A DNA stretch of 64,000 nucleotides from Mytilus californianus. Taxonomy: Eukaryota. Made by a program: the position numbers and the translations under genes. The DNA lies in NCBI RefSeq assembly GCF_021869535.1, contig NW_026262712.1, positions 90,458,001 through 90,522,000 of the forward strand, read 5' to 3'. Positions 3,061 through 62,776 of this stretch are shown here, piece by piece. The notes under the pieces were generated by a model. That model had not been told where the DNA came from and did not search any database. It worked only from the letters and a program-made list of their open reading frames with translations. Position 1 is the stretch's first letter. The number at the start of each line of letters is the position of its first letter.

Positions 3061-4207
3061 TCGAAATTTGAATGCAAGTATTCATAATGTTTGTTTGGGG
3101 TTTTTGTGTCGTTTGGTTGCAGAGTCTCTGTTTATTCATTCTTGTAGTTTTTTAGTTCGGGTATTTCGCACTTTTCTAATGAAAGAAACAGTTATTCGTA
3201 AATCTGAGCATATAACTACAAAAGAAGAAAAAGTCTCTTTCCGGCAATCTGTAAAAACTTGATTTTATTTGTAGGTTATTAAACAACAAGTGTTCTCGTT
3301 AAAGTGCCAACACTTAGTATTCCATCGTGCATCTTGAGTCATTCAGTGGATTAGTCTATTAGCTAAGGTAAAAATTATTGCTTGTTTAGTAAACAAGCAA
3401 TTCTACTGGCGAGAACATTAGTATGCTAATGTATGTGTACAGAATCTATTAAAGGTATTGTACAGACCTTATTAAGTAGGATTATAATGATTCGTTGCCA
3501 CCTCAATCACACAATTTCAGTTCCAATAATGTTTCTTGGGTTGAATTTTTTTATAGATTTTTGAAATCTTTTTTTTTTACAATCATTTCATGGCCATAGG
3601 TTTTTATTACTTTTCCAATGTCGTGTAAGTGCCTTAATGCATCTTTAAAATTGTAGATATGTTTATATTGAAAAAGAAGCAACGTTGTGAAAATAAGGAC
3701 ACCCATTTCCGATCAATTTAATTTGAATTCATATATTATGTTGCTGCTTCCTTTTGGTAATTTCCTTTAACAGCGAGCAAATTTTTACAGCATGCTCGAG
3801 TTCTTGTTTTAAGGCGTTCAGAAACCTTTGCTTTTAAATCTCCATTGTAAATACAACTTTGTAAGCGGGCGTAACGGTCGAACGTTTACATGATTTAACC
3901 CAGCCAATGGATGGCCACAACTAAGCTATTTTGGATTCGATAATATGTAAGGCCCATTTTATCTTAGACAGGCAACGATCTATAGAATTTAGTGGAAAAA
4001 CACATACGATAATAGACATTTATTTCTATTTTTGGTGTTTTCCAACTTTGTGCAAATCTTCATAGAGGAACGAATGCAGAGATATTGGATAAGGAAAAGG
4101 ACGAATGCATTTAAATAAAAGAGGACAATTTTCGGTTGTATGTACTAATAATAAAGTTGTTTTTTTTTTGGGGGGGGGGATAAGATAATTTTAAAACAAA
4201 AAGATAC

Positions 4208-24450: not shown

Positions 24451-27400
24451 TTAAATATTTTCGTCGAATCCAATCCGTCCAAAATTCAAGGCAATGCCAA
24501 AGGAACTATAAAATTCCAATATAGTTTTGTTACCTAGTGGTATAAGAAGTTTTTGAATGCAAGTTACTGCTTCTGGTAGCTTAGATTTTTTATGTGTCTT
24601 GTTAAAATCCACTTCCATAGAAAAGTCGTAAGTTGGCACGTCATCCAGACCAGTTATGAACTGAAACAACCTTGATGCTTCCTTGTCTGTAAATTAAGAA
24701 TTACGATTATAATACGATTTAAAAAAATACCATTATTTTTAACGATGTAAAAATGAAGGGATGTTGGGTGTCTGCCAGTGAGACAATTTTCCACCAGGGA
24801 ACAAATGACAAAGATAGAGCATGAAATTTTAATAATTTTGCAATTTCAGAGGCCAAATAATATATCTTCTCTTATCTGAATATATTTATTGAACCACCTT
24901 ACTTGTCCTGTGGAAATTTAAGTTGTTAAACCCGCCCCCTTTCCTTATTAACATTTTGCAGATCAATTGACTTGGAGAACTTTTATTCAATCAAAGACAT
25001 TATTTTGCTAACTTTTTAAGAACACTTCATTAGTTTTCACGTGTGTGCATGTCGTGATCATCACATAATACTTAACCTCTCGTAGGACTTAAACTCACCC
25101 TTTTTCGGTTGGTAAATATTTTGTATTTTTTTTCTTTGTTTGTTTGTCTTTTGTTGTCTGTTGTTTATCTTTTATCCCCATTTTGCATATTGTTGTCAGT
25201 CCTTATTCGACTTAAAATTCTTGATTGGCCATTTTTGGATTCTTAAAAGAGAGGTAAAAAATACCAATGGGACATTCAAACTCATAAGTCGAAAATAAAC
25301 TGACAACGCCATGGCAAAAAAAGAAAAAGACCAAAAGACAAACAACTGTCAACAAAACACCACATAAATTAAATACTAATGCTGGGAATTTGATTATTCT
25401 TAGCATAAATAATGTTCAATATACCCTCTAGATCATCGAGGCACTTCAAGGTAAACTTCTTTGCTTTTTCTTCATCTGCGTTTCCTGTTTCTAACACATG
25501 CACTTGAGGTGTCAATTTTTCTTTGATGAACTGAGCAGTTGTAACACGTTTGCTCCGAACAAGAAGCAAATGTTCAAATTCAGGTAGTTGTTTAACTTTG
25601 TCTAGAAACTGGAGACAGTTAAGACCAAGTCTGATTTCGTTTAACGATGTAGATCTTTTGTCCACGAGGTCCCACTGCAGCAGTGTTTGTACATAGTATA
25701 ACCTGTTGTCGAGCTGAATTAAAAAGAGAATCTTGTATATTAAAGTCACGTGAGCGCCATATTCAATACAAGAATGACTTGTTTGTAGCAGATCTTTTAA
25801 TCATTAAAATTTCTCTTGATTAAAGTTTTGAATGTAAAGGACTAAGAATGGTTCTTCTTCAATGATTCACTTATTTTGGAAATTAAAAAATTAAATTGCA
25901 ACTGTCTTGAAAAATGTTGGAATACCAAGACATATTAATGCCTTCAAAATGGCTACTCTATACATGTTGATGTGGACATTCATGAAAAATTGGGGTCTGA
26001 TAGATACATTACAGGTAGAGGCAGAAAAGGCTTCTTTTCTAGGTACTTTTGATGGCGTGTTGTCTCGACACGACAGAAAGATGAGTAAGCATGCCTTTTG
26101 CAAATGTACTTCAAACTTGTACTACAAATCTAGAACTGTAAGTTCTGTAGCAGTAAAATAATATTACAGGTTGCACTTTGTAAATACAGCAGTTTCTCTA
26201 ACCACGCCTTTTTTGGGGAGATATTTAATATTCATAGATATGTTTTTGTTTACCTACTGGTTCCCAGATATGATCTCTATGTTTCATCTCATAGAGACAC
26301 AACTTGGGAATTTTAGCAGTATAAATACTCATGGATGGCGGCCAAATTGATTTCTGAGGAAGACCTACAGTGAAGGGAGGGTTGTACAGAATTTTAGTAT
26401 AAGTTTTAACTTTTCGAAGTTCGAGGCATATAAATATTGAAAATATGCCGCACAGCCCTTTGTTTTTACCTTTGAAAAAAAAAGTAGTGCATATGAACTT
26501 TCCATTCTAGGATATAATTTTCTACGAAACTTCCTAGTAAAAATGGCACAATTTTTGACGTAAAAGGAGTTCCTATGGGAAATTGCGTTGTCAACATTTA
26601 CAGACAGTATTTAAGCAGTTGTATATTATTTATGTGAACTACCTGTAAAATAATTTTACTAAAATGAACATATGCAAAAACAGTGTAAAATACATTTGAA
26701 TCTTAATTCCGTTTGCTTTTAGTGTTATGATACCTTTACCAATACGTATAGTGACCATGTCTGTACAAGACCATCCACAGTTGTCCATAAATCTCTCTGT
26801 ATCTTCTCCGATTGTTCTGTTTAACTCTTCCTGGGAGTCAGCAGCATTAATCTGTTTTTACAATTTTGATAAATATTATAACATTAATAAGATTTCAAAT
26901 ACTCATTTTTTCAGTTTATTTACTTGTTAAATCATATTAAAAAAAAAAGAATGAATAACATGATTTTTTTTCAGAGATTTGATTGTTAAAGCACACTTAT
27001 TACAAAATATATACAATTTAGTACAAATAGCAACAGATAAAAATTCAAACAAATTCATCACATACATGTTCTTAAGTTTGACCTGATCTATACTCAGTAT
27101 GGCATTGAAATAAAGTTTTGTAATGACACAATAAAGGAAAAATTGGTTTAATGGCATCAACATTTTATCAAAAAAAATAAATGAATAACAGCTCCTGGGA
27201 ACAAAAAAATTACCAAGATGTTTTATCAACAAATTATTCAGTGGCCTTATTATATTAATGAAACTAAAGATTTGTTGAAAGGCTCACATATAAAGTAGCT
27301 AGAAATAACGCTGAGCATTCTTTATAAATCGAAATTTATAACAATTGGGCCAAATCAGTCTGTCATTTAGGTGGCTTGTGTGTTGTCTTTTTTTTCATAA

Positions 27401-30919: not shown

Positions 30920-33900
30920 ATGGGGAATAAGGAGAGTAGTCTAAAATTAAAAAGTGGTACATCGTCGGAACCAAACGCCAGCAACAACAATATAGAGGCA
31001 AGTATTACATGCAAGATAAGGTTATCTAGTGTGAATGATTCCATTGAACAATGAGTTACAACCATACTCTTGGAATATTTTACAGAAACATATATTTGTT
31101 AGTATATATACTTCAATAAACGGCAACTAAACAATAAAAATTACCCATTAGACATCTAGGGAACTCAACAAAAGACAGATGTGTAAACAATATGTCGCGT
31201 TGTAGACCGTTCAAAATCAATAAAAGTTGTGCATAAATAAAACAGAAACTAGCAAAGATTTCAATTGCAACAACACCCAGTTTTCCCAAGGGAAAAGCTT
31301 CAAACAAGCAAAAACCAAAACCAAATTAAAATACACTTTAATAAGAAAACCACTAAATGCTCATATCTAAGACACGGTATATGATTGCACAGTTCTAGTA
31401 TGACTATAACATAATCGATATTATTATATAAATAACACAAGGTATTTGCATGATGGTTTCACTTATACAGGTAAAATTTTAACCCGGAAACTACTCTGGT
31501 ATAAAGTTTAAGACAAAGAACACTTGAAATTATCATTTCATATGTTATTTTTTCACCATCATGAATTGAGTGGTCGTTACAGTAATTATTTTCCCAACTC
31601 ACTAGTTAGGAGACAACTGTAATTGTAATTTAAGCTTGGCATACGTAAAACGTATATTCTATCTAGTCTTGATTTTAAAATGATTTTTTTCTGAAAATTT
31701 TAAATACACTTGACAACACTTAATTTCCGGCTAGTTTAATCTTTACATTTCAAGTTTTAGATGTTTCTGTTGTGAATTGAATGATAATTGGTAAATATTT
31801 TAAAACAAAAAAGTATTTATGCAGCATGCGAAGAGGGGATGATCAGAAAAAGACACCCGATCTACCTTACCAGCAATATTTAAATTGTATTCACATCATT
31901 TGCAATTTTCGGAAATTTAAATTGTATTCACATCATTTGCAATTTTCGGAAATTTAAATATTGTGAGTTTCATTTCAAGTTGATTTACACAACACCAAAA
32001 CAGAAAATAAGGATGATGCTGTACTATCGATTAATGAAACATAATCTGTACACTCACTCGAGAAAGAGAAAAACCATCACACATAACATACTGTAATGGG
32101 CAATGAAATCAAACAAAGACTATCATAACTGCACAAAAACTCATTGTAAAATACAGAATCAATACAAACATTTAGACATGGGACACATCAAACTATTTGT
32201 TAGATATCTAGCCAGGGAAAAAATCATGAAAAGGGCAAAAAAACAAATAGTCTACATATTAACAATTTCGATAAACATACTCACTGTAAGAGAAAAATGT
32301 GCTGTTATACACATAAAAGAAAGTGATAGCGAAGAATGTATAACTACTTGAATAAATGAGCAGATTGTGACTAATAAACTCGTCATAGATAAATGGTCCT
32401 TTGAAAAATAGCATTATCCATCTAAGGTCAATTTTGCTTGAGAGAGATGGAATCCTAGATTCTTGGTAATATTCATATCAATAAACGGCGAATTAAAAAA
32501 AAAAGATTCTTTTTTATATACAACAACTGCAAAAACTGTGTTACGTGAAACACAGATTACTTTTTAAATGGTGACACTTGTAGTATATCTCAACCTGGTA
32601 ATTTTTTTACAGAACTTGCTACGTAACGCCATTAGAATAGCATATAGCATTCCAATTGCAGGTACGTTGCTTTGCTTTTGATTCAGTTTTTGCAGTGTGG
32701 TTTGTGATATTTTATTTTTATACTGGTGGCGGTGTTCTTTTTCTATATTCGAAGTCGTGTCCGTCTTTTTTCTTTAAGAGATTGTTTTCCATTCAAATTT
32801 TCATATTCTGTCATTACCCAGGGTAAAAGAATTTGCATGTATCAATTTCCTGTACCGATGTCTGTCTTTCTCCAATTTTTTAACTTCGATTTTTGATTGG
32901 CCTTCTTATGTAATTTATGTTTCCTCATAAACTGTCCCATGCATATTCAATGCAGTATGTGTCATGTTTTAAGAAAGGTCTTTTTTTTCTATATTTTGCC
33001 TAACTTTTGAGGGAAATTTATAAACAGAACGATTTTAAGAAAGAAAAATATCTGCATCGTTATCAGAAGTAATGCGTTTTTTATATTTTCTTTCCTAAAC
33101 TTGCATCACAGGTCGTGCGATGTCCTTTTAATTCCGCTAAATATCAAATTGGTCAGGAGAGTATGTAATAATCGTCAGTAAGGTTTTACTAGCTCATTCT
33201 TGTATAAAATGATATAAAATTGCATTGAATTTACAATATAGGATTCATGATTTGCGGTTATTCAATTGAAAAACACGTGACATGTGAACGGAAAATGGTA
33301 TATGTTTTCATCGGCCAATCAGCCACCAGTTGCAAAAAATATTTTTTTTGTTTTAGTATCTCACCCTTGTCATTCGCAGACACCAATGTAATCCCAAGAG
33401 CTCTGAAATTGTCTTCTTTAGCAGTCAAAATTTTAACTATGTCGATTTCATCACTAGCATTGTAGGAAAGGTTGTAAATGATTGGTCCCTAAAATAAATA
33501 GTTAAGATCATGAAAACCTTTCAAAATTTTGTAAATTGTATTGATAAATGAACAAGTAAATATCTTATTTAGACACTTTAGTGCAAAGAGATCATTTGCG
33601 GTTAAATGATTACATTTCGACAGTTTTTGCAGCTTTGAACTAAATTCAAGAAGTTTGAAGCCGTAAAACAAATTGTAAGACAAAATTAAGAAAATATGAA
33701 TACTGATGTCTGATATACTATTGTTTTATGCATATCTAGTGTAAGTTATTTGATAGATTTTAACTGTGAATGCAAGGAGTTAAAAAAGTTGTCTGGTCGT
33801 AAATTCTCCATTTCCGAAAATGTACGTTTATTGGATCTTCATTTCAATTGCAGATTTATATGTTTATCGTGACGAAATAAAACCTTTGATTGACAAGATC

Positions 33901-36900
33901 ATTGGTAAAAGAGAAAGCATGATCAGTATAAAAATTGACAGAAATAAAATATACGAAGAAGCAACAGGTCGATTTGTTGGGAAAGTGAAACAGCTTGCTA
34001 AAATTAGCAGTCCCATGCATGAAAAACCTGTGATCACATTCAATGATACCGACGTGTTAGACGTCGATGGAAGTGGATTCCGAAGAGAGTACTATTCGGT
34101 ATACTTTCGAAAATGCATAGCTAATCTTTTTGAAGGACAAGGAAGACAAATGTTACCAAAGAAAGACTGCACCAAAAAGGATGAGTTGAAAGCTCTTGGG
34201 ATAGCCATCGTTGAATGTGTTTTGAATGGTGATTGTGGGTTTCCTTACCTACACAGAGGAATTTATAAAGCTATAATTGGATGTGATTCTGATGAAATTG
34301 ATCAGCATTGCAATTTAAAAGATATTCCGAACGGCGAGGTTCAAATGGTTGTGCAGCAAGTAAGTTTAAGGCTTCTCCCAGTCCAATTTCGTGCTGATGC
34401 CTGTTCCTCGTGAAATTTATACATAGTGACAGTAACACCTAAATGAATATGTTAAGAATTATCATTTACAGTAGAGTATGATGCTGCAATCTAGGATATA
34501 GCATATAGAAAAGATTCAAGGAGTTGACTTAGCTATATCACACTATAAGAAGCTATACTCCAAGTTGTTCAATGTGTCGGATTTAAGTGATTTCTATTTC
34601 AAAACGTTACGAGAATTAAAAGATTTCTAAAATCAATAAACATGAACAATTCTGGTATGGCTGAAAAAAAAGCCTTAGTTTTTCTTTCAGTTTCAACAAT
34701 TACTATTTTCATTTCCTCTGTAGAGACAAGATAACTCTCACTGTTGTTATTCAAATACATACAAATCAAATAAGTCTATAATCAAATCTTCAACTAAATC
34801 GGTGCTGTCTAACTTGAAATTAAGCTTTAAGCATCTAATTCGTGTTTTTGACATACCGTATTAACATGTTCCCCGCTGCTAGGGTCATGTCATTTGTTTT
34901 ATTAGTATAATTGTATAAATCATACTTTTACAAATAACTATTATTTTTTTAATTAAAGTAGAATTTGTATTTTTAATAAATTAATCATACAGGGTTTTAG
35001 TCTAGTTATGCATTTATATGTACGTGAAATTTTTATATATTTCCAAGAAAAACATAAAGTAACGGCCTTTTAAAACATTAAATTAGTTTTGTGAGATTTA
35101 TTTTTACAGATAAACGATGCAAACACTGACGGAGAAATAACCGAAATTCTCGCTAGCGATTTAGCCTCCTTCATTAGCTATGTTGGATGGCCAGTTGGAC
35201 AAACAGTAACGGTAAAAATGCTATTTGGTTATTTTCAATAAATAGATTTGATTGGCTGTAATTACATATATTAATTTTGATATCGGATATGTTCCTTATG
35301 TCGTAACTACAATACCCTCCCTTTTCTGCTTACCCTTCCGGAGTACCTGAGATCACCCCCAGTTTTTGGTGGGGTTTGTGTTGCTTAGTCTTTAGTTTTC
35401 TATGTTGTGTCATCTGTACTATTATTTGTCTGTTTGTCTTTTTATTTTTGGCCATGGCGTTGTCAGCTTGTTTTCGATCTATGAGTTTGACTGTCCCTCT
35501 GGTATCTTTCGTCCCTCTTTTAAACAGATAACACTATAAAAAGGGCTATTTCATAATACATTTAAAAAAAGAGGCAGAAGATACCAAAGGGACAATCCAA
35601 AATCATGTCGTGAGAAAACCGACAATACCATGGTAAAAAGAAAAAGGGACAAAGAGAAAAACAACAATCTACAAAACACAATACAGAAAACTGAAGACTG
35701 AGCAACATGAACTCCGCCAAAACCTTAACTAAGATGAAAAACAACCATTCGACTTCTTCAAAATCACAATAAATAAGTTTTATTGCAATTGACCAATGCT
35801 GATATATCGTTTTACAAGATATACCTAAAATATCGTACGGATATGTAACACATGAAAAAATTCAGATACAAATACAGGGGAGAGTATTTTATAGAGAGCA
35901 CTTTAAAAGCTTATAAACTATAGCATACACTAATAAACGATAGAATATTAGAAATATCGGAAAAAATAGATTTACTGGTATAACTTATATTTTGGAATTG
36001 CGCACGATCATGCTTGTCTCGGGCAGCTTTTGACCTTTTTATACACTAAAAACGTTGAATGTTTACTGATTCTTATATTAGTCTATGAAAACACAGTCTA
36101 TTTACTAGTAACTGTTGAAATTGAGCTATTGAACGAGCTTTCAGAAATTGCGACTTTTAAAAGATAAACACTTTGTGTTTTGTTTTAATTGTATAAGTTG
36201 TTTTTGTGCTTAGTTCCAATCTAATGAGTCAAACTCTTTTCGACATTTTTACTGTTTATTGTTGTTGCTGTGGTGCTGTTGCATCAGTAGTAGGACATAC
36301 TTTAATCACCAATTTCATGAAGAATTAAAAAAATGCGTGAATGTTTTTCTTCTCGGTTTTTACAAATGAAACTTTAAGTATCTTTTAAGAGTGAATTGGT
36401 GTCTCATAGACATAAATTCGAAATTTATTTCCGTTATTCATATTTAAAACTCCAAATCATCTATCAACAAATCTTACACAGTGTCATCAAATCAGAACAT
36501 ATTTTTTAGATGACTAACCGACATGTGTTGCTGCAGTATATACTCCGATGGTTTATCATAGACCACAGACAAAATGAAATAGACCAGTTACGTCACGGTC
36601 TCAGCTATATGGGATTTCTTGATGCCATTAAATCAAACGACTGGTTTGAACCTTTATTTGTTTACTCAGAACAGTACAGCATTACAGCAAGATACATGAA
36701 AGACAAGCTAAACCCAGTCCTAGAAAAACTGGAAGCCAAAACTGAGAAGGAAATTAACTGTGTAAAGTTTGCTAAAGCTTGCATTGATTCCTTAGATGGT
36801 ACGAATAATAAGTTTGTATGGTTTTTAACTCTGCAGATTGTGAGATGTTATAATTATTCAAACATGAATGTGTCCATTGAAATTTGTACAGGGTTAACTC

Positions 36901-37642
36901 TAAAGAGTAATATTTTGTTTCATATTTTAAAAATTATTTCCAAATAGCAAAATATTCCTGTATACGTTGTATTTCTATCCTCAGGCATTGGTTGCATTTG
37001 CCTAATTTGGCACACCCTTTTGGAATTTGGTATTAAATACTATTCATATTCGTTTTTTCCTTAACCTTCTGATTGGTTTGACTCGAGTATTTCTAGTCTT
37101 ATGTAGATGAATCGCGCCTCTTGTGTTCGAAATAGTAAGCCTGGTAGTGACTTTGAACAGATAGTATTCAAATAATTGAAAAAAAAAATAAATATTCAAG
37201 CTGAAAACGCTATCACTTGGACACAGTTTTCCAAAAGAAAAAATCCAAATATTTTACAGGGGTGTAGAAATATCGTCATCTATATTTCTCTTAGCAGCCG
37301 TGTTTATGGGACGTCTGTTTGAATTGCAATTGAACGTTAGGCAAACAACAACTAAAAATAAAATACACAAAGAGGTAGCTGAATTGATAGTTTTAATCTT
37401 CAATACATATGTTCACAATTTCTGTTTCAGATACACAAGCCAGATTACTTTTTGCCTTTGTCACTAACCTCAATGACCCACCATTAGAGGAAGAATCTAT
37501 GGAAATCATCTTTAATACACAAAACCCTGATAGACTTCTACCAGAGAGCTATACATGTCTGAATAGACTTCTTCTTCCACTGGGAAATAAAGATATTAAC
37601 CACTTCAAAGAATCTTTTTTCAAGGCAATAATGGAACAATGA
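30920..37642 (+). CDS. HECT-only E3 ubiquitin ligase gene B (G2E3-like HECT, ~411 aa); join(30920..30997,32613..32661,33854..34359,35110..35211,36510..36798,37431..37642)
   Basis: Phases are consistent throughout. N-terminus MGNKESSLKLKSG..NIE|NLLRNAIRIAYSIPIA|DLYVYRDE. HECT motifs: LDVDGSGFRREYY, GDCGFPYL, EIDQLRHGLSYMGFL, LLFAFVT, LPESYTCLNRLLLP; ends FFKAIMEQ*. Intron 1 requires a GC donor (GAG|gcaagt). Confidence 0.88.
31878..31959. repeat. 37-bp perfect tandem duplication
   Basis: ATTTAAATTGTATTCACATCATTTGCAATTTTCGGAA twice, plus a partial third unit, in intron 1 of gene B. Confidence 0.95.
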
Positions 37643-38373
37643 TACAGATTTCTGACATACCAAATTGTTTTTGTGTTTATTTTGTTTTTCACTTATTGTT
37701 GTTGCATGCACGAATAAAAGAGAAATCAACTGTGAATTTCCTTAGACAAAAGAATGTTATACCACTCAACACAACAGAAATGAGAGATTACTATTTGGAA
37801 ATCAAGATCATGAAATTGAAGGACGACGAAAACCATATCAGTTGAATAGTTGCAATTAATTTAACGTATAATACTGATTCCAGAGCGCACATGTAATTCG
37901 GGGATGTTTTCAAAAAGTTACGCTCGATAACCAAATGAAGGGAAATTTTGGAAGAAAAAATGTTAATGACAAAAACTTAAGATACTAATCAGTCTTAAGA
38001 CAACTCTTTGTCGATTTAAACTGTTAGATCATTTGCCTCTTATCGTTAACAATGAAATGTTTCATTAATATCCAATTTCACGGCAGGCTTATCAAAGCTT
38101 GAAAATTGGTGAAATTTGTTATCTATTACTATGAGGTCTACTCATAGATATCATGGACATTAAAGCTCACAAATGCTTTAAGGTGTGAAAAATGTGTATC
38201 AGAACGGAAAAAGGATCTTTGTAATATTAATGTTCAATTACACTTTCATAATTTGAGTATGTTTTTGAAAAAGTAATGATTTATTGCGTTTTATTAAGGC
38301 AAAATGTTGAATTAATTTCAAGACTTCACAATACAATACAATCATTGTCCGGTTGTGTCGGTTCATTTAAGAA

Positions 38374-38520
38374 TTGAATGCTTCTTTTTGTAAATCTATT
38401 GGGGTGTAAAAGCGTTGACCAAAGTACATTTTGTATGAAGCGTGGAAGCGCTTCATTCCAAAAATGTGCGCACGGTCAACGCTTTTACAACCCTATAAAG
38501 TTACTAAAAGAAGCATTCAA
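38374..38520. repeat. ~147-bp imperfect palindrome (MITE-like core)
   Basis: TTGAATGCTTCTTTT..GGTGTAAAAGCGTTGACC..ACATTTTGTATGAAGCG / CGCTTCATTCCAAAAATGT..GGTCAACGCTTTTACAACC..AAAAGAAGCATTCAA. Confidence 0.8.
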
Positions 38521-38879
38521 TACTTATAATTACATTTTTTGCTGGGAACATGAAAACACGATTTCTATCAAGTTTTTCTTTTATTTACCTGTGCACTTTA
38601 TTGTAGAAGCTAGTGTCATCATGAATTTTAAATTTCATTTTGAAATGAAGGTTAATTTTAGAATGACGCGGGATTGCTGTTAGCCAATCAAAATAACGTA
38701 TTATAATGAAACATACATGTAATGTAATTATATAAGATTAACAGACCGGTTATGTTCAGTAGATAAAAGAGAATCAATATAAGTATTAACTATGATATTG
38801 ATATGTCCTTAACTCACAGCTGATAATTTTCCTTTTTTCCCAACCTAGCATGTATCTTCCTAAACTAGCTTAGTATGAC

Positions 38880-39052
38880 GTCCATTTTCGCTGATCTAGT
38901 ATACATTTTGTTTAGGGGCAAGCTGAAGCCCGCCTCCGGGTGCGGGATTTTCTCGCTGTGATGAAGACCTATTGGTGGCCTTGGGCTTTTTTCTGCTTTT
39001 TGGTCGGGTTGTTGTCTCTCTGACGCATTCCCCGTTTCCATTCTCAATTTTA
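38880..39052 (+). repeat. Interspersed repeat family R1, copy 2
   Basis: Near-identical to 14077-14238 and 44458-44622. Confidence 0.85.
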
Positions 39053-39239
39053 AAATGACCTTCAACAGTTTTGGGTGTTCTGTTTAACCACAACTCCATA
39101 TAATTATATATATATATATATATATATATTGTTCTTTCTATACAATTGTCTGTTGAATAATGAAAATTTCAAAAATAGAAAACCTCGTTGAAAGTATTTT
39201 ACATAGATTTATTACCATTGTTTCGTTCAATACTCTTTT

Positions 39240-39520
39240 GATAACTGTTATTTCCGAGGATATCATTTGCACTGCTAGAAGCAAGTAGAATTCTAAACTT
39301 CAATACTTCTTCAGTTAAACTGTTATTTCCGATGATACCATTTGCACTGCTATAATCCATTAGTTTAACAACCATTGGCTCGTTCATTACTACTCCTGTT
39401 AAACTGTTATTTCCGAGGATATCATTCGCACTGCCAAAATCAATTAGATTTTTACCATTGGCTCGTTAAATAAGACTCCCGTTAAACTGTTATTTACGAG
39501 AATACCATTCGCACTTAACG
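39240..39520. repeat. Minisatellite, four units (periods 75, 84, 83 bp)
   Basis: Core AACTGTTATTT(C/A)CGA(G/T)GATA(T/C)CATT(T/C)GCACT recurs at ~39243, 39318, 39402 and 39485. Confidence 0.85.
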
Positions 39521-40127
39521 AATCAAAAGGGGAAGGGGGACGGTCAATTAAGAGTTATTCATTATTTATCTTATCTCGAAAATACATCCGTAAATGATTT
39601 CATCGATCTATATAAATGTCCAGCTGTTTACTCGATTACTCGAATATTGATGACGCTGTTGATGTTATTGAATTTTACAGAAATAAAACATTTGCTAGCA
39701 AGTCCTACGTTCAATGAGCTTTACGAATATTCCCTTTCTCGTCAAATGGTTTTGATCTTCGTGGTTTTAGAATTTATCAAAATTTTTATTTTCATAAAGC
39801 TCTCCCTTTTGAAGTTTTTATTAGATATTCTTTATTCAACCAGTTTGCCTCCTTTCTTCATTGGACTCTTTCTGCATTTCTGTAAGATAATTTGAGGCGG
39901 CGCTTGTACATTACCTTGGCGACTTCTTTCTTGGGGAGGGGGAGGGACGGGACCAGTCATTGTGCTGACCTGCTCCATACTTTCAAAGATTATCTGCAAT
40001 GATCACAAGGATTACATTCTGAGGTCTGAGGTAAAGAAATTGACACTTATGACATGACTATCCGATGAATAACTTAAGAAAGTTCCATTTGTTTTAAACA
40101 ATAAGAAGGTCACGCTAAGGGAAATGC

Positions 40128-43100
40128 TACGGAAGCCGATAAGGGTCATTCAAAAAAAAAATATGTCGTAATTACGACATAGTATGTCGTAATAACGACA
40201 TCGCTATGTCGTAATAACGACATATTATGTGGAAATAACGACATCGCTATGTCGTAATAAAGACATATTATGTGGAAATAACGACATCGCTATATCGTAA
40301 TTACGACATATCATCTATATTATCTATATCATCTATAACAACAACCTTAACATTGCTACTTTGTGAGCATCGAAACACTATGGGAAACAACATTTTCATC
40401 TTTATTTAAAGAACTACTTATCAGAATTGAATCAAACTTGATATACGTGTGCACTATAAGGTCCTATTCAAGTGTTATTACTAAGTTACACATTGGTTAA
40501 AACACATGACCGCCAAGGGACTTTGAAAAAATCAATGTTCAAAATCTGCTTCTCAAGATCACTGAAATGACTGAGTTTAAACTTAGTATAAATATACAAT
40601 GTGTAAATAGTATCCAGGTCCTTAAAAAGAGTTTTTACGTTTTGAGCTGATCCGAAGTTAAAAATGGCCGCCAGTGAGGGCACAGTTTGTATCAAAACCC
40701 TATCGTAAACATATTCATTTTTGAGAATGATAAACACTGAATTCAATCAAGCTTTATTAATATTGAAGTTAGTTACGCTATATGTCTGCACATAATAGAA
40801 CTTTATTTCATAATCGTGTCTAATGGGACCCATTGAAATGGTGAATGATTCAGGCTTGTTGGAGCCTCTATATTTATATTTGGCATTTATGTAGATCTTA
40901 TCAAGAAGTGTTAAGTACCAGAAGGATTATGTGTGCTATTGCAATCTCTTGTCGTCCGGCGTCGTCTGTTTTTTAACGTTAAATTTTTATTAAAGATTAC
41001 AAAAATCACAAAATGTTGATAAAAGTTTAGCCGCCGTCGCCGCAAAATCAATTCCTAAAGTTTCGCTACTTATGACGTTCATCGCAGGCGAGGTAAAAAT
41101 CTGCTATTTCGCTATGTGGTCTTTTTGTATAGTATTGTGGATATAATTGCATACAGTTCGAGATTGCATGTGAGTTACGTAAGCGCTTAACTGTTTTTTT
41201 TATATCCTGTGGTGTTTGTCGTTGATGAAATATGTTCGCTGTTGTTCTGCAGTTAACATGTTTTGCGACTATTACTATACTGTAGTATATTATATGTTTG
41301 TGCGTTTCTCTGTGATATATGATCTTGCGTGTGTTTGGTCTGTATTTCTGTCACGTAGTGTTATCATTTCAGCGCCATTTTTAACATTGTCATAAAGCGG
41401 GAGGTTTGGCTAGCCATTAAACCAAGTTCAACCCACCATTTGTTCTTAAAATGGCCTGTACCAATTCAGGAATATGACAGTTGTTATTAAAAAGTTCTTT
41501 CTATGTATGTTAAGGGTTTATTTTTGTTCACTTTAGTGTTCCTGTTGTTCGTTTATTTTCCTCTTAAAGTTGATATGTTTCCCTCGGTTTTTAGTTTGTA
41601 ACCCGGATTTGTTTTCTCTCAATCGATTTATGACCTTTGAAAACCGGTATATTACTGTTGCCTTTATTTAGTAACAGTGTCCATGCTGTTGGTTGCCGGT
41701 CAATTTCGACGGACTTCAAGTGATGACAATACATGTAGCTATCCCCAAAAAATGTTTTAGAGGACACAACTTAGATATGGGTCAAACTGATCTTTCTGAA
41801 ATTTTTGGCATAGGTCCATTTTGCCATGATGAACCCTCAACAGATTTGAGATAAATGTAACGATATTCGAGACATTATCAAAAAAACTAATGTGTGACCA
41901 TTATGTCCTATATTTTCAAGTTAATAACAGCTGCTGTGTTTTAAGGAGTCGACAATCAAAGCACGCCTTTTGTGAAGGAAACATTTAACAAGGAAAAATC
42001 AAACACGCTTACGACAGACGACGACGGACAACAAACGATAGCAATCGCTCGCATACCACTTCGAGTACGAGACACAAGTTCCTTAGGTGATAGGTGAAGA
42101 TCAGGGGACCCATTAGGCTCGATTATTAGGGGTCTAAAGTTTAACATAGGCTCCAATGGAAAAAGCTTTGAAAATCTTTTCATTAAGAACTACATGCCAT
42201 ATTGGATCAATCTTAGAGAATGGATGACCCTTATATGATGAGGATTAAATATAAAAAAAGAAGATGTGGTATGATTTCCACAAGAAACCAAATGCCACAG
42301 AAATTAACAACTATAGGTCACCGTACAGCTTTCAACAATGAGCAAAGCCCATGCCACATAGTCAGCTATAAAAGGCTCCGAAATAAGAAATGTAAAACAG
42401 TTCAAACGAGAAAACTAACGGCCTAATTTATGTACAAGAAATGAACGAAAAACAAATATGTAACACATCAACAAGCAACAACTACTGAATTACAGGCTCC
42501 TGACTTGGGACAGGCACATACATACAGAATGTGGCGGGGTTAAACATGTTAGCGGGAATCTAACCCTCCCCTAAGTTTGTAGGAATAGTTGTCCTGGGGA
42601 ACATTGGTTTAAAGAACTTGGGGTCCAACGTTTAATACAGGCTTCAATGGGGAGGACGCTGTAAGAATCTCATAAAGAACCAACAGTAGCAATGCAGTTA
42701 TAATTTGCATCAAGCATCAGTAGGCCATTGTGTACAAATGAAGGTACAGAGGTCCATGGGTCTGAGGACTAGGAGTCCAAAGTTTAACAGTCTTTATTTG
42801 GAAAAGCTTAAAATTCATCTTCTTCAGAATCTGCAATGGAAATGCAGTCATATTTTACACGAATCTGTACATGCCAAACATAACTAGAGGCTCCAAGAAG
42901 CCCGAATCGCTCCCCTGTGCAACTGGGTCTCATTTGACTTGATTATAAAATAAAGTTCTAGTATGTGCAAGTAAATAACTTTAATTAAGCTTGATTGCAT
43001 TTAGTGATCATTATTCTCCAAAAAAAGATGAATATGTTTACGCTTCAAACCTTGCCCTCACTGACGACCATTTTGAATTTTCTATCGCCTCAAAAAGTGA

Positions 43101-43558
43101 CAACGCCACGGTTGTCGTAATTATGACATAGCGATCAGGAGCCTGTAATTCAGTGGTTGTCGTTTGTTGCTGTGTAACATATTTGGTTTTTTTTCATTTG
43201 TTGTACATTAATAAAGCCGTTAGTTTTCTCGTTTGAATTAAATTGTTTAACATTTGTCATTTCGGGGCCTTTTATAGCTGACTATGTGGGGCTTTTCTCA
43301 TTTTGAAGGCATTGTGGTGACCTCTAGTTGTTAATTTCTGTGTCATATAGTCTCTTGGCAATCATAATACATACTATTATATATATATATATAGCAATGT
43401 CGTTATAACGACATAAGAATGTCGTTATAACGACATAGCGATGTCGTAATTTCGACATAGTGATGTCGTTATTACGAAATGCTATGTCGAAATTACGACA
43501 TATTTATGTCGTTATTACGACATAATTTTTTTTTGAATGACCCTTATCGGCTTCCGTA
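40128..43558. mobile_element. TIR-bounded composite element (TA termini, ~55-bp TIRs, subterminal 21-bp palindromic arrays) with nested repeats inside
   Basis: Left end TACGGAAGCCGATAAGGGTCATTC(A)10TATGTCGTAATTACGACATA; right end TATGTCGTTATTACGACATAA(T)9GAATGACCCTTATCGGCTTCCGTA. Arrays of ATGTCGT(N4)ACGACAT units at ~40162-40310 and ~43395-43525. No transposase ORF inside. Confidence 0.85.
41375..41672 (+). repeat. Interspersed repeat family R4, nested in the TIR element
   Basis: Homolog of 20670-20960 in the opposite orientation. Confidence 0.75.
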
Positions 43559-44457
43559 AAATGCCATTCGTTTTGGGTTCATTAAACTTTGCATGTCGGG
43601 TTGTCGCGTCAGGCAGAGCCTTTTGCAGATGATTGATTGACACACCATATGGTTTGAATAAACCACACTACAGAATTAGAATTAATTCAAACATTAAAGC
43701 TTATCTTAGAAAATTTTAATAGCCCTTCTTTAATGCCAGATTGATTTTGGACTTCTAATGAAGCACTTGACAGTGCCTTAGGCTTTTCATAAGGTTATGG
43801 CATATATTTCAAGGGTAGATAGGCTCATGGGTTATGACCCAAAATATTGCTTAAATGTTGTCTAATATCAAACATTACATTTTGGAGAAATATATCCAGA
43901 AATGGTATCTGTCATCTTCTGAAAGTATGAACTTAGGCATGAGAAGGTGCTGTTTCATATTGATTACAAAGGCGCGGGACACATTCTATATAAGAAGACT
44001 TCAAAATCATAGGATGTCCTGATTTTGGTCAGTCGATTAGTTCTAGAAACATAAACATTAAAGCAGAGCACGTACAAGATAAGATTAGAATAGGGTTATA
44101 GAAGGGATGTGTCATATGTGTAGTACAAGCGTAATTCGGATTGTTTGCGATTTAAAAATCGTAGGAACTGTTGTTTTTGCAGAGATATGTGTAAATAGAG
44201 GGTGTTCTTCGTCCAGTCCGTTCTTGCACGTGGGAGGAATATTTTTGACACACTTCAGTTATCATAGGGTACCCGGTTCTTTGTAATGTGTGTTTTAACG
44301 CAAGTGGTCAGTTTATTGAAAGATCTCACAAAACATGTTTAACCCTGTCGCATTTTTGCGTCTGTCCCAAGTTAGGAACATCTAGCCTTTGTTAGTCTTG
44401 TGTGTATTTTTAAAATTTTGGTTCATTTGTATGTTTCGGAGTTAAGTCTAGAATTTA

Positions 44458-44686: not shown

Positions 44687-45816
44687 AAACTAGAGGCTCT
44701 CAAGAGCCTGTGTCGCTCACCTGTATTTACTGATACTTTTATCGTTTCGTATGAAATCAAACTAGAGGCTCTCAAGAGCCTGTGTCGCTCACCTGTATTT
44801 ACTGATGCTTTGGAAATCATGTAAAATAAGGTTAAAATCATAATTAATAGTATTAGATATTAGATATTATAATAATATCTAAGATAATAACAAAAAACTG
44901 CAAAATTTTTGTAAAAAAATACTATCTCAGGGGCAGCAACCCAACAACGAGTTGTCGGATTCGTCTGAAAATTTCAGGGCAGATAAATCTAAATCTGATG
45001 AACATTGTTGCCACCTGTTAGATTTGCTCTAAATGCTTTAGTTTCAGAGATATAAACCAAAAACTGCATTTTACTCCTATGTTCTATTTTTAACCAAGTC
45101 GGCCATGATGGTTGGAAGGCAGGGTCATCGGACAAATTTTTTAAACTAGATACCCTAATAATGATTATGGCCAAGTATGGTTAAATTTGTCTCAGTAGTT
45201 TCAGAGAAGAAGATTTTTGTAAAAGATTACAAAAATTTCGAAAAATGTTAAAAATTGACTATTAAGGGCAATAACTCCTAAAGGGGTCGACTGACAATTT
45301 TGGTCATCTGATTTATTTGTAGATCTTACTTTGCTGAACATTATTGCTGTTTACAGTTTATCTCTATTTATAATAATATTCAAGATAATAACCAAAAACT
45401 GCAAAATTGCCTTAAAATTACCAACTCAGGGGCAGCAATCCAACAACGGGTTGTCTGATTCATCTGAACATTTCAGGGCAGATAGATCTTAACCTGATGA
45501 CATTTTAACCCCATGTCAGATTTGCTCTAAATGCTTTAGTTTCAGAGATATAAGCCAAAAACTGCATTTTACCCCTATGTTCTATTTTTAGCCATGTCGG
45601 CCATGTTGGTTGGCAGGCGGGGTCATCGGACACATTTTTTAAACTAGATACCCTAATGATGATTGTGGCCAAGTTTGGTTAAATTTGGCCTAGTAGTTTC
45701 AGAGGAGAAGATTTTTGTAAAAGTTAACGGACGACGACGGACGACGGACGACGACGGACGACGGACGCCAAGTGATGAGAAAAGCTCACTTAGCCCTTTG
45801 GGCCAGGTGAGCTAAT
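44687..45816. mobile_element. Helitron/Helentron-associated (HINE-like) non-autonomous element with internal tandem repeats
   Basis: Short subterminal inverted motifs GCTCACCT (left, 44715 and 44787) / AGGTGAGC (right, ~45805); a (GACG/GGAC)n microsatellite at ~45728-45768; a terminal hairpin-like TTAGCCCTTTGGGCCAGG; and a ~500-bp internal block present twice (~44860-45260 and ~45380-45725). Remnants of similar elements at ~40925-41100, 41950-42220 and 42690-42940. Confidence 0.7.
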
Positions 45817-51700: not shown

Positions 51701-51970
51701 TGTATGAACTTTAAAGTATTTGCTTCATTTTCAGACGAGGAGGCTGCTTATCTGTTTCAGTTTATTACCGGACTTGACGATGTACCGCCATACAACTTTT
51801 CCATCCAGGTGGCGTTTAATCGAAAGAATAAAAAAGCGACATTACCTGAAGCTATAACTTGTATTCAGAGACTTCTCATTCCTCTGGGTAACAAATCGAG
51901 ATTAGACTTTTATAAATCATTTGACATTGCAATAAAAATGGGCAGACTTGGATTTTCAGATGATTCATAG
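48784..51970 (+). CDS. HECT-only E3 ubiquitin ligase gene C (G2E3-like HECT, ~400 aa); join(48784..48853,49523..50028,50549..50650,51140..51428,51735..51970)
   Basis: All junctions are GT-AG with consistent phase. N-terminus MGQTSSIQSPRIDAVPGTSRRRT|ASVPE. HECT motifs: EKAVDLGGPSRELF, HGPGFPYF, LFQFITG, LPEAITCIQRLLIP, tail GRLGFSDDS*. The last exon is identical to gene A at 50 of 78 residues (hand count). Confidence 0.92.
50874..51098. mobile_element. ~225-bp foldback/MITE-like element in intron 3 of gene C
   Basis: ACACCGGATATCCCAATCCAAATCCGCGGAGGGGTCC..GAGCAATT pairs with AATTGCTC..GGGTCCCTCCACGGATTTTGGATCGGGATACCCGATGT; GC-rich against an AT-rich background. Confidence 0.7.
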
Positions 51971-60200: not shown

Positions 60201-62776
60201 TAAAAAGGTAAGTACATTTCCCCACACTTAAAAATTAAGCTATAAATCCTATTAAGTCTAAAAAATCTTAAATGATTAACAAAAAGTATCAAATATCTGA
60301 CATCAGTACCAAATTTACCAATGGAAACATAGTATGATAACGCGATTGACTATCACTGACAAGGGTATTTACTGATCTGACTTTAAAAGGGCATACAAAC
60401 GTGTGGCGGGATTAAAGTAGCACTCAATCCTCCACCTTTTAATCTCGACCAGTATAACAACAGTTGGTTGATAGAAAAGCGTATACAAATGAGTTCATGG
60501 AATGCACTCATCATCAAAGAGTTTAGTACAGAATTAAAGAAAAAATGTTTGTCGTGTTTAAAATTATGGATAGGCGATCTAAAGGGGAAAGTCCTAAACT
60601 TGTTTGCCTGATATATCATACGATATGTACAACATAAAGCTTAGTCTATAATGCCATTTTTGTCAGATTTTGTGATTGGAATCATACTTCCACAATAAAT
60701 TCTTATATGCAATAGTGTGATAAAATTTAGAAGAATGATTCTGAAATTAATATTTATATCTTGTTGTAATTTCTAAAAGTAATACGCCCATCGCGTCTGA
60801 GACGTCACTGCAAACAAACACATATCGTACCAAATGATAAACACACACACCATCACTACTAAGGAAAGGCAAAATGTCGGCATACTCTTTTTTTTTTACA
60901 AAAAATGTGTTTATGAAGTTAAACATGAAGTTTCAGGCAAGCGTAAGCAAAATATATTTGTTAGGGGTATATATCTGAATTAATTTGTAGATTCAAGATG
61001 CCGAAAAAGAGTGCGATATGACTGATGCCGTTTCGGAAGACAGTGCAAACTTTTTGAATTTTATTGGTTGGCCGGGAGGGCAAGCAATGACGGTAAGTCT
61101 TTTTATTCTTTTATCATAGTTGTGGTGCCAGATATTAAAGTGCTTCTCAGTCAAAAATACATTGAAGTGTTGCTAGGGAAAAAAAATCAGTTTGCAAACA
61201 TTCGGTACAGTTACTGGGTAGAGAGTTATGTTATGTTATCATATATTTAGATAGACTGGAAGGATCCGTAGATGCCATCGGTAATATTTTTTATACATAT
61301 AAAAGCATTGAGATATGATTAAAGACAACCACTTCGTACAGACGAATTAACTAGTTTAGTTTTTTTTTTATTCAACTCTATCCTTGTTAAAAATCTCTAT
61401 TACTGGAACAAAAAGGTACATAGATAAAAATTAGGGAACAGAAAAAGGCACAATACTCTACGTCACCGATTGGACTAAATGACTTTCTTGCAAGTTGCTA
61501 GTATGTTTCAATATTGCCATGTACCTGCAGTCATGAAATAAATGTTTTAAAATGACAGTCAATCACCAGTTGTACCCTCGTGAGTCCTAAAAGTAAACAT
61601 AATATATGGACATTGATTTTAACAAGTCTAAATTGAAAACCTTGGACATTGGACATTGATTTTATATACACATGTATATGCTTTGAAGTTTAGTTCATTT
61701 ATTATTCAGGCTATTATTCCCTATTCACAAGTGATAAATAGACAACAAAAACACGGATACACTATTGTATTTGCATTTCTTACAACTCAGTATGCATATT
61801 AGTCTTATTTCTTGTTTTAGCTGAAAAACAAACATTCTTTGCTGCATTACATTACAAAATGGTTTGTCATAGATCAAAGACTTTCAGAGGTCGAACAGCT
61901 GAAAAAAGGTCTTAACTACATGGGGTTTCTGGACACTATTAGAACAAATACGTGGTTTGAACCTTTATTTGTGTATTCGGAACAATATAGTATCACTGCC
62001 AATTATGTGAAGCAGAAATTAGAACCACTGCTAGACAAACTGCCTACAAAAACCGATATACAAAGAAAAGCACAGAAACAAGCAAAAGTGTGCATTGGTG
62101 CCCTTGATGGTTAGTATGATTAGAATTATATGCTTTTCAGTATCAAATCATTTGATTGAATATACCATTCTTTTAAACATTTCTTAAACGGATTAGAGGC
62201 ATTATTTGAATATACCTCATACTACTGGAATATTTCGAAAACTCCATTGGTCTTTTTTCCCAGCGTTCATTTTTATTAACAATGAATGTAGAAAAACAAA
62301 CAAAAAGAATTTTGATCCACAGCAATTGGTACCTATTTCTTGTTTAATATTAGGTCTGTGATTCCTATACAAAAATAAGAAGATACCGTGCAACAATCAA
62401 TATTTTTTTATTTCAGTGGTTAAAAAAATTGTCATATGGAATACGATTCAAATTTTCACATGGTTCGTTTGAGCTGTCCGGTTGGCTCATTTAATAATCA
62501 AATTCATGAAAACAGTCCAAAAATGTTTTACGTGTTTCAATCTGTTGTTTGTTTATTTCAGAAACGCAAGCACGACTGTTGTTTGCATTCATTACAGGAC
62601 TTTATGATCCTCCTATCATAGAAGAAACCTTCTGTGTAGAATACAACATGAATCCGGATATGTGTTATCCGACAAGTTACACATGTTTAAATAAACTTTT
62701 CCTTCCATTGGGTAATAAAGACATTGACAAGTTCAAGGAATCTTTCTGGGCAGCATTATACGACGTTCAGAGATAA
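57212..62776 (+). CDS. HECT-only E3 ubiquitin ligase gene D (G2E3-like HECT, ~406 aa); join(57212..57268,58424..58469,59696..60207,60991..61092,61821..62109,62562..62776)
   Basis: All junctions are GT-AG with consistent phase. N-terminus MGNQPPKEKNPSGTVRGLE|DLLKDAMRLAHVAVS|DLYSYREG. HECT motifs: FDVDGSGFRRQYY, GDCGFPYL, LLFAFITG, YPTSYTCLNKLFLP; ends FWAALYDVQR*. Exon-for-exon paralog of gene B. Confidence 0.92.

What the first reader, a model, noticed from the sequence alone, without database searches (positions are those of the whole stretch)
37431..37642. B and D keep the catalytic Cys but terminate before the conserved C-terminal Phe
Seen: the number of residues after the catalytic Cys is 35 in A and C (Phe at +31, GFDENI*/GFSDDS*), 27 in B (..KAIMEQ*) and 29 in D (..ALYDVQR*, 62562-62776). 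Both B-type paralogs end at nearly the same place, so this is not a one-off nonsense mutation. B also has FVTN in place of FxTG. Established: the near-terminal Phe of HECT domains is needed for transfer of ubiquitin from the thioester to substrate, not for thioester formation. Inference: B-type proteins could be ubiquitin-charged but non-transferring (decoy, sensor, regulator or relay partner of the A-type ligase).
Basis: partly seen in the sequence, partly recalled or inferred. Interest (0 to 1): 0.72.

Follow-up and report, generated by a model that had tools for sequence, protein, structure and literature searches.

The report
Mussel HECT ligases lacking the C-terminal tail
Two mussel ubiquitin-ligase genes really do end just before the short tail that such enzymes normally use to pass ubiquitin on; this shortened form is expressed and conserved across Mytilus species, so it is a working natural variant and not a broken gene.

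Summary
Window 37431-37642 is the last exon of gene B, which matches Mytilus californianus LOC127705419 exactly (411 aa). The catalytic Cys codon is at 37556-37558, 27 residues follow it, and the stop is TGA at 37640-37642. Gene D (LOC127705418, 406 aa) ends 29 residues after its Cys. Genes A and C keep 35 residues, including the GF motif.

RNA reads and contigs confirm all three splice junctions laid and run unspliced through the stop for about 490 nt, so no tail exon is missing. B and D orthologs in five Mytilus species end identically. dN/dS against M. trossulus is 0.08 for B and 0.13 for D. The tail-less proteins form one clade (100/100). Related proteins from scallop, a unionid mussel and Solemya keep a GF or GY tail, so the tail was lost once. 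An AlphaFold model of the M. trossulus B ortholog is a complete HECT fold that ends at the last helix.

The proposed function (charged with ubiquitin but unable to transfer it) is untested and only partly supported. The Rsp5 Asp495 and Arg501 equivalents, which act in ligation, are retained. Published tail deletions in E6AP and HECTD3 still ligate. Gene A is decaying.

The most likely reading is a functional thioester-forming HECT whose discharge step is altered. It belongs to a bivalve family of about 400-aa HECT-only proteins that start with Met-Gly, which I did not find described in the papers searched. First-stage notes on this same window had already listed the gene cluster and the Met-Gly starts.

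The parts
37431..37642 (+). Gene B last coding exon (HECT C-lobe end). FVTN motif, catalytic Cys codon at 37556-37558, stop TGA at 37640-37642.
   Evidence: Translation. Pfam HECT hit, profile positions 230-297 of 306. Splice joint 36797/8>37430/1 in RNA.
37643..38132 (+). Gene B 3' UTR, contiguous with the last exon in RNA-run contigs. A contig from the same run overlapping its end reaches 38325.
   Evidence: An X1 contig of 1769 nt covers 37430-38132 unspliced and joins all the upstream exons laid. No joint leaves the exon before the stop.
30920..30997 (+). Gene B exon 1 coding part. Starts MGNKESS and has a GC donor.
   Evidence: Model equals XP_052065692.1. The GC donor is conserved in M. 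trossulus.
32613..32661 (+). Gene B exon 2.
   Evidence: It explains why the RNA-run contigs appear to start at 33840.
33854..34359 (+). Gene B exon 3 (N-lobe). Carries the equivalents of Rsp5 Arg461, Asp495, Arg501 and Glu502.
   Evidence: Joint 34359>35110 in RNA. Mapping to Rsp5.
35110..35211 (+). Gene B exon 4.
   Evidence: Joints 34359>35110 and 35210/1>36509/10.
36510..36798 (+). Gene B exon 5.
   Evidence: Joints in RNA.
62562..62776 (+). Gene D last coding exon. Cys codon at 62684-62686, stop TAA at 62774-62776, tail ..ALYDVQR.
   Evidence: The D model (57212-57268, 58424-58469, 59696-60207, 60991-61092, 61821-62109, 62562-62776) equals XP_052065691.1.
51735..51970 (+). Gene C last coding exon with the canonical tail ..GRLGFSDDS (comparator).
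   Evidence: The C model is 400 aa and the M. trossulus ortholog is intact.
24451..24686 (-). Gene A last coding exon with the canonical tail ..GRIGFDENI (comparator; the gene is damaged upstream).

Best explanation
B and D are intact, conserved HECT-only proteins of about 410 aa; B transcripts are seen directly. They belong to a bivalve family whose full-length members begin with Met-Gly, a start typical of N-myristoylated proteins.

In the common ancestor of the Mytilus B/D clade, the last 8 or so residues of the HECT C-lobe were lost. That segment is the flexible tail GRxGF plus about four residues, and it carries the '-4 Phe'. The protein now ends at the last C-lobe helix. All of this is shown.

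The following is inferred. Selection keeps the catalytic Cys, the rest of the C-lobe, and the N-lobe residues that form the ligation site in Rsp5 (equivalents of Asp495 and Arg501, and Glu502 in the B line). So these proteins most likely still accept ubiquitin from an E2 as a thioester and still discharge it. Without the tail that normally locks the two lobes together and directs chain building, the second step is probably altered. The change could be slower or non-processive transfer, a changed linkage or acceptor, or dependence on a partner. Complete loss of transfer seems less likely.
For: Sequence and splice structure. The models equal the NCBI proteins.

RNA: all three junctions laid are confirmed, and transcripts read through the stop into a 3' UTR of at least 490 nt with no joint to a downstream exon.

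Conservation: orthologs in M. californianus, M. galloprovincialis, M. edulis, M. trossulus and M. coruscus have identical ends. Four more divergent relatives, three of them kept in the tree and falling inside the tail-less clade, end ..MEQSSLL..VGQIQ..SDIER and ..FYDK.

Selection: dN/dS between M. californianus and M. trossulus is 0.083 for B, 0.132 for D and 0.082 for C. For the last 70 codons it is 0.105 in B and 0.065 in D.

Tree: the tail-less clade has 100/100 support. It sits inside a B/D-type clade whose scallop and unionid members keep GF or GY tails (alignment).

Fold: AlphaFold2 gives pLDDT 88 and pTM 0.84, with the last helix at residues 395-408 of 409. All top Foldseek hits are HECT domains.

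Ligation residues are retained.

Literature: tail deletion alters ligation but does not always abolish it.
Against: No biochemistry exists for any member of the family.

In Rsp5, the best-studied case read here, losing the -4 Phe or even the last residue severely impairs ligation.

I found no compensating aromatic residue specific to the tail-less clade at the Rsp5 Phe505/Leu506 positions.

In the D line the Glu502 equivalent is Gln. In the whole tail-less clade the Glu491-equivalent position is no longer constrained; an Asp two residues before the Asp495 equivalent is conserved instead. So the ligation site has been remodelled and could be inactive.

RNA evidence was laid only on B. The depth, about 7 reads, cannot exclude a rare isoform.
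Confidence: 0.55

Rival explanations
1. B and D become charged with ubiquitin but cannot transfer it to lysines. They act as a decoy, a sensor, or a relay or regulatory partner of the neighbouring canonical A/C-type ligase.
For: The -4 Phe and the C-terminus are specific to ligation in Rsp5. A/C-type and B/D-type genes lie next to each other in Mytilus (window and L001/L002) and in Argopecten. In Potamilus they have consecutive locus tags. The split between the two types predates the divergence of these bivalve orders. Glu502 is replaced by Gln in the D line, and the Glu491-equivalent position is unconstrained in the tail-less clade.
Against: The Asp495 and Arg501 equivalents act in ligation and are not needed for thioester formation, yet they stay conserved. 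Tail-deleted E6AP and HECTD3 still ligate. Gene A, the head-to-head neighbour of B, is damaged here and is a pseudogene in M. trossulus while B stays under strong constraint. Linkage of old tandem duplicates does not prove functional coupling.
Confidence: 0.25
2. B and D are non-catalytic. The HECT fold is kept as a ubiquitin-binding, E2-binding or scaffold module at membranes, and the Cys is retained without forming a thioester.
For: The family is very divergent from characterised HECTs, with about 15% identity to solved structures. The catalytic loop reads YTCLN rather than HTCFN. The tail is absent.
Against: The Cys and its flanking motif are invariant in every tail-less sequence across at least six lineages. 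Constraint on the C-lobe is strong, with dN/dS of 0.07-0.10.
Confidence: 0.1
3. Artefact or decay. The short ends reflect a missed 3' exon, an assembly error, or pseudogenes.
For: Nothing beyond the unusual length. One gene-caller ORF from an unnamed relative (P0073) reads on past ..MEQ.
Against: Spliced RNA runs through the stop. The stops are identical in five annotated Mytilus genomes. The ORFs are intact and dN/dS is about 0.1. P0073 starts inside the intron on a 917-nt contig and puts Trp where the window has TGA, which looks like a translation-table artefact of the gene caller.
Confidence: 0.03

Closest known systems
Canonical HECT E3 ligases (E6AP/UBE3A, the NEDD4 family including Rsp5, HUWE1, AREL1)
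   Same: Bilobal HECT fold. Pfam PF00632 scores above its cut-off. The catalytic Cys sits in a TC-x3-L-x-LP context. The equivalents of Rsp5 Arg461, Asp495 and Arg501 are conserved.
   Different: There is no C-terminal tail and no -4 Phe; the protein ends at the last helix. There is no substrate-binding N-terminal domain; instead there are about 40 residues starting Met-Gly. The catalytic loop is YTCLN rather than HTCFN. Identity to solved HECT domains is only about 15%.
G2E3 (G2/M-phase-specific E3 ligase). NCBI labels one Mytilus paralog 'G2E3-like'.
   Same: These are the nearest sequence relatives outside the family. The weaker full-length hits of the exhaustive search (E about 1e-11 to 1e-3) end ..GFPNP or a similar GF tail; I take them to be G2E3-like by resemblance, since that library carries no names.
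   Different: The bivalve family is separated from them with 100/100 support. It is about 400 aa with HECT as the only Pfam domain. I recall that G2E3 has N-terminal PHD/RING-type zinc fingers; I did not check that here.
Engineered tail-deletion mutants of HECT ligases (Rsp5 F806 and C-terminal deletion mutants, E6AP delta-4 and F849A, HECTD3 delta-4)
   Same: They lack the same element that B and D lack naturally. They remain able to form the thioester.
   Different: They are laboratory mutants of tail-dependent enzymes, and the outcome ranges from severe loss of ligation to changed chain type. B and D are natural proteins that have been under selection without the tail since before the B/D duplication.

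Membership tests
HECT domain (Pfam PF00632) | Sequence match above the Pfam gathering score | tested here: met
   B scores 44.6 bits and D 40.3 bits against a cut-off of 23.9. The B last exon alone scores 26 bits.
HECT domain (Pfam PF00632) | Bilobal N-lobe/C-lobe fold | tested here: met
   The AlphaFold2 model of the M. trossulus B ortholog (93% identical to B) has pLDDT 88 and pTM 0.84. The top 50 Foldseek hits in the PDB are all HECT domains with probability 1.0.
HECT domain (Pfam PF00632) | [quoted passage not shown] | tested here: met
   The motif ..SYTC-LN-x-L-x-LP is present in B, D and every tail-less relative.
HECT domain (Pfam PF00632) | C-terminal tail with a Phe about 4 residues from the end | tested here: not met
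   B ends ..KAIMEQ and D ends ..ALYDVQR. The B last-exon match stops at Pfam profile position 297 of 306, and the full-length B and D matches at 281-282. No conserved aromatic residue replaces the Phe: the Tyr in D is Ser in close relatives.
HECT domain (Pfam PF00632) | Formation of a ubiquitin thioester and transfer to a substrate | not testable with these tools
   This needs E1/E2/E3 assays.
G2E3 | Groups with G2E3 orthologs and carries N-terminal zinc-finger domains | tested here: not met
   The family is separated from the putative G2E3-like outgroup with 100/100 support. No Pfam domain other than HECT is found in the 411 aa.
N-myristoylated proteins | N-terminal Met-Gly with a small residue, ideally Ser or Thr, at position 6 | tested here: inconclusive
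   B starts MGNKESS and relatives start MGNKAST, MGGKQSS, MGAAQSK and MGNENSS. D starts MGNQPPK, which has Pro at position 6. This is sequence only; the lipid modification was not tested.

The most novel reading that the evidence does not exclude
The tail-less B/D proteins are membrane-anchored HECT enzymes that use a different second step. Either they relay ubiquitin by transthiolation to the canonical A/C-type HECT encoded next door, working as a two-HECT module, or they discharge it onto a non-lysine or non-protein acceptor at the membrane. On this view the loss of the tail, which positions lysine and builds chains, is adaptive rather than disabling.
Probability: 0.15. Interest if true: 0.8.

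Novelty: new variant of a known kind. Interest (0 to 1): 0.5.

Why it matters
The C-terminal tail and its -4 Phe are treated as a near-universal requirement for the ligation step of HECT E3 ligases. Here is a natural clade that has lacked the tail since before a gene duplication shared by five Mytilus species, yet keeps the catalytic Cys under strong purifying selection. That makes it a ready-made natural experiment on what the tail is for. It comes with close paralogs (C) and outgroup homologs (scallop, unionid) that still have the tail and can serve as matched controls or donors for tail swaps. It also draws attention to a bivalve family of small HECT-only proteins starting with Met-Gly. This family is absent from the published Mytilus HECT survey, which lists 22 genes and reports G2E3 as 'not found' (PMC11353290).

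Tried and rejected
1. Missing tail exon. Rejected: RNA contigs and raw reads run through the stop, and no joint leaves the last exon.

2. Pseudogene. Rejected: the ORFs are intact in two genomes, the ends are identical in five species, and dN/dS is about 0.1.

3. Stop-codon read-through. The in-frame continuation after the B TGA carries no GF tail, and M. trossulus has TGA followed by TAA. The ORF P0073, which reads Trp at the stop, is a gene-caller product on a 917-nt contig.

4. The Tyr in the D tail ..LYDVQR stands in for the -4 Phe. Rejected as a conserved feature: the position is Ser in P0071, P0123 and P0124.

5. A compensating aromatic residue at the Rsp5 Leu506 equivalent. None is specific to the tail-less clade. 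The residues are Val in B and Ile in D, and the neighbouring Phe/Tyr is shared with relatives that keep the tail.

6. A scan for columns conserved everywhere except in the tail-less clade. It found only the tail itself, the Glu491-equivalent position, and a Lys-to-Val/Ile/Leu change at B residue 84 whose meaning is unknown.

7. RNA-run contigs seemed to start at 33840 rather than at the predicted acceptor at 33854. The cause is that the last 14 nt of exon 2 match the last 14 nt of the intron at 13 positions.

8. The look-up of encoding contigs with isoform X2 (P0002) found nothing, because only the longest product of a gene is indexed.

9. The word-indexed search with the family alignment reached few new full-length members.

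10. Two papers were not available: Brooks 2008 on G2E3 and Jiang 2024 on HECT C-termini.

Full report
**What is at the coordinates**

The window is AT-rich eukaryotic DNA with introns. Read in the third frame, 37431-37642 gives ..TQARLLFAFVTNLNDPP..LPESYTCLNRLLLPLGNKDINHFKESFFKAIMEQ followed by TGA. The matching exon of D, 62562-62776, ends ..SYTCLNKLFLPLGNKDIDKFKESFWAALYDVQR followed by TAA.

A (24454-24693, minus strand) and C (51695-51967) end ..GRIGFDENI and ..GRLGFSDDS. All four exons hit Pfam HECT. The B match stops at profile position 297 of 306, and the C match reaches 303.

**Gene models and identity**

Comparing all open frames of the window with each other showed four paralogous sets of HECT exons. 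With splice sites this gives:

| Gene | Coding exons | Length |
|---|---|---|
| B | 30920-30997, 32613-32661, 33854-34359, 35110-35211, 36510-36798, 37431-37642 | 411 aa |
| C | 48784-48853, 49523-50028, 50549-50650, 51140-51428, 51735-51970 | 400 aa |
| D | 57212-57268, 58424-58469, 59696-60207, 60991-61092, 61821-62109, 62562-62776 | 406 aa |

B and D are letter-for-letter identical to Mytilus californianus XP_052065692.1 (LOC127705419 isoform X1) and XP_052065691.1 (LOC127705418 isoform X2). HECT is the only Pfam domain in these proteins.

**Is a tail exon missing?**

I laid one raw-read RNA run and three sets of contigs from public runs (one on record as RNA, two only guessed to be) on 33700-39600.
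- The joints 34359>35110, 35210/1>36509/10 and 36797/8>37430/1 are GT..AG. Each is supported by 4-7 raw reads; the first and third appear in contigs of all three runs and the second in two, with the third run showing it one base over.
- One 1769-nt contig joins all the exons laid and then runs unspliced from 37430 to 38132. That takes it through the TGA at 37640-37642 and about 490 nt further.
- No joint leaves the last exon.
- Read orientation fits a plus-strand RNA.

So the main B transcript ends its reading frame at ..MEQ. Depth is only about 7 reads, so a rare isoform cannot be excluded.

**Conservation**

An exhaustive profile search with the B/D N-lobe exon found only 66 proteins at E<=1e-3 among 1.84 billion cluster representatives. 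This is a narrow family.

Cluster look-ups show:
- B orthologs in M. californianus, M. galloprovincialis and M. trossulus end ..KAIMEQ. The M. edulis and M. coruscus gene models are truncated, fused or mis-predicted at the 3' end.
- D orthologs in M. californianus, M. coruscus, M. galloprovincialis, M. edulis and M. trossulus all end ..ALYDVQR.
- More divergent relatives, known only from transcript-sized contigs or as an M. edulis paralog, end ..KAIMEQSSLL..AIVGQIQ..ALSDIER and ..AFYDK.

I fetched the M. trossulus loci. They are collinear with the window and have intact B, C and D with the same splice sites and the same stops.

Nei-Gojobori dN/dS between the two species:

| Gene | Whole gene | Last 70 codons |
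|---|---|---|
| B | 0.083 | 0.105 |
| C | 0.082 | 0 (no non-synonymous change) |
| D | 0.132 | 0.065 |

These are working genes, and the short end is itself conserved.

**When the tail was lost**

I built a maximum-likelihood tree of 23 proteins, rooted on six more distant HECT proteins from the same search that I take to be G2E3-like.
- The bivalve family has 100/100 support.
- An A/C-type clade includes a Potamilus protein (99/97).
- A B/D-type clade has 91/93 support.
- Inside the B/D-type clade, all eight tail-less Mytilus-type proteins form one group with 100/100 support.

The B/D-type proteins outside that group keep a tail: Potamilus ..ENGRRGYGLD and Argopecten ..AHVGFGKRSSE. Solemya, which the tree leaves unplaced among the three clades, ends ..GRRGFGNM. 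Two sequences of unknown species have a displaced Phe..NKFDYANV and ..KTFDKLAANKPCC.

The simplest reading is a single loss of the GRxGF-plus-four segment before B and D duplicated.

The Asn in FVTN is conserved in the B line. The D line keeps FITG.

**Fold**

An AlphaFold2 model of the M. trossulus B ortholog (93% identical to B, same tail), built with a 50-row alignment, has mean pLDDT 88 and pTM 0.84. Its last helix spans residues 395-408 of 409. All the best Foldseek matches in the PDB are HECT domains. The domain is therefore complete up to its last helix, and only the flexible tail is absent.

**What the literature says about the tail**

- In Rsp5, the -4 Phe (F806) approaches Phe505 and Leu506 of the N-lobe. 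Mutating it, or deleting the last residue, impairs ligation but not thioester formation. The F806L defect is largely rescued by L506F or L506W (PMC3738095).
- In E6AP, the F849A and delta-4 variants still form di-ubiquitin as well as wild type, but they lose chain elongation and K48 specificity (PMC6463701).
- HECTD3 lacking its last four residues still autoubiquitinates (PMC13018541).

**State of the rest of the ligation site**

I mapped the family onto Rsp5 through a profile alignment to PDB chains.
- The equivalents of Arg461, Asp495 and Arg501 are conserved in B, D, A and C. In Rsp5, Asp495 is essential for ligation and dispensable for thioester formation.
- The Glu502 equivalent is kept in the B line but is Gln throughout the D line.
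- The Phe505/Leu506 equivalents are Ser-Val in B, Ser-Ile in D and Thr-Leu in A and C. There is no compensating aromatic residue.
- A scan for positions conserved in all 15 other sequences but changed in the tail-less clade returned only four columns: the G and F of the tail, the Glu491 equivalent (now Val, Ile, Glu, Lys or Leu in the tree rows, and also Pro or Asp in short exon fragments), and a Lys-to-Val/Ile/Leu change at B residue 84.
- The acidic loop is not lost, though. An Asp two residues before the Asp495 equivalent is conserved in the tail-less clade (Glu in one paralog). It is already present in the scallop homolog and in one displaced-Phe relative (P0005).

The ligation site looks remodelled rather than abandoned.

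**The supposed partner**

A/C-type and B/D-type genes are neighbours in several species.
- In the window the order is A(-), B(+), C(+), D(+).
- M. trossulus has the same order.
- In Argopecten a B-like gene lies about 5 kb from a convergent C-like gene that has a ..GKIGFSE tail.
- In Potamilus the two types have consecutive locus tags.

This old linkage is compatible with a two-enzyme module, but it does not prove one.

Gene A is decaying. Compared with an intact 389-aa relative that starts MGAEESYLQEKSKA.. (P0165), the window copy has a frameshifting deletion in the Met-Gly exon and an AT in place of the GT donor after exon b. NCBI models it from an internal Met with an AT-AC junction. The M. 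trossulus copy has many frameshifts, and its Cys codon now reads Phe. B therefore does not depend on A. C remains a possible partner.

**Verdict**

The absence of the tail is ancestral to a clade, is present in mature mRNA, and is under purifying selection.

The functional reading is open. I give:
- 0.55 to a functional thioester-forming HECT with an altered discharge step;
- 0.25 to the charged-but-non-transferring decoy or relay model;
- 0.10 to a non-catalytic module;
- 0.03 to an artefact.

The published Mytilus HECT survey does not include this family. I class the finding as a new variant of a known kind, of moderate interest.

Earlier first-stage notes on this same window (s1-335332, s1-335355, s1-335450) had already listed the four-gene cluster, the Met-Gly starts and the head-to-head A/B arrangement.

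Noticed in passing
window 24451-28817 (-), and L001:3700-9300: Gene A (NCBI LOC127705422, modelled as 357 aa from an internal Met) is damaged in this window. Its Met-Gly exon (28779-28817) has a frameshifting deletion and an in-frame TAA compared with an intact 389-aa relative (P0165). The donor after exon b reads AT instead of GT, so the NCBI model implies an AT-AC intron. The M. trossulus ortholog is an unannotated pseudogene with many frameshifts and its Cys codon changed to Phe.
   Followed up: yes
window 30920, 48784, 57212; proteins P0005, P0007, P0057, P0068-P0072, P0091, P0105: All full-length family members, of both types and from Mytilus, Potamilus and Argopecten (the Solemya gene models do not), start Met-Gly, usually with Ser or Thr at position 6. 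This is a start typical of N-myristoylated proteins, and I know of no HECT ligase with one.
   Followed up: partly
window 35276-35669; similar copies near 25199-25415, 54286-54567 and 58210-58368: A repeat inside B intron 4 has very high depth in the RNA and RNA-guessed runs (thousands-fold word depth), and reads run on into unrelated sequence at both of its ends. Rfam gives only sub-threshold matches, on both strands, to long hairpin miRNA-precursor families. That fits a MITE-like inverted-repeat element.
   Followed up: partly
window 30998-30999 and L001:10560: The first intron of B has a GC donor (ATAGAG|GCAAGT), and it is conserved in M. trossulus.
   Followed up: partly
window 32648-32661 versus 33840-33853: The last 14 nt of B exon 2 and the last 14 nt of the following intron match at 13 positions. 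As a result, spliced contigs appear to start 14 nt upstream of the true acceptor at 33854.
   Followed up: yes
L004:10001-42450 (Argopecten irradians): A B-like HECT gene and a C-like HECT gene lie about 5 kb apart in convergent orientation. Linkage of the two types is therefore conserved outside mussels.
   Followed up: partly
B residue 84 (window about 33975-33977): A Lys conserved in all 15 tailed relatives and outgroup proteins is Val, Ile or Leu in seven of the eight tail-less sequences. It changed together with the loss of the tail, and its structural role is unknown.
   Followed up: no
window 38231-39215: A stretch downstream of the B 3' UTR has high depth on both strands in the RNA and RNA-guessed runs, with many loose ends. 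It is probably another repeat or a separate transcript.
   Followed up: no
window 2494-3081, 40100-40400 with 43300-43580, 44860-45810: Self-comparison of open frames shows internal tandem or duplicated repeats. One is a duplicated block of about 500 bp at 44860-45230 and 45380-45810.
   Followed up: no
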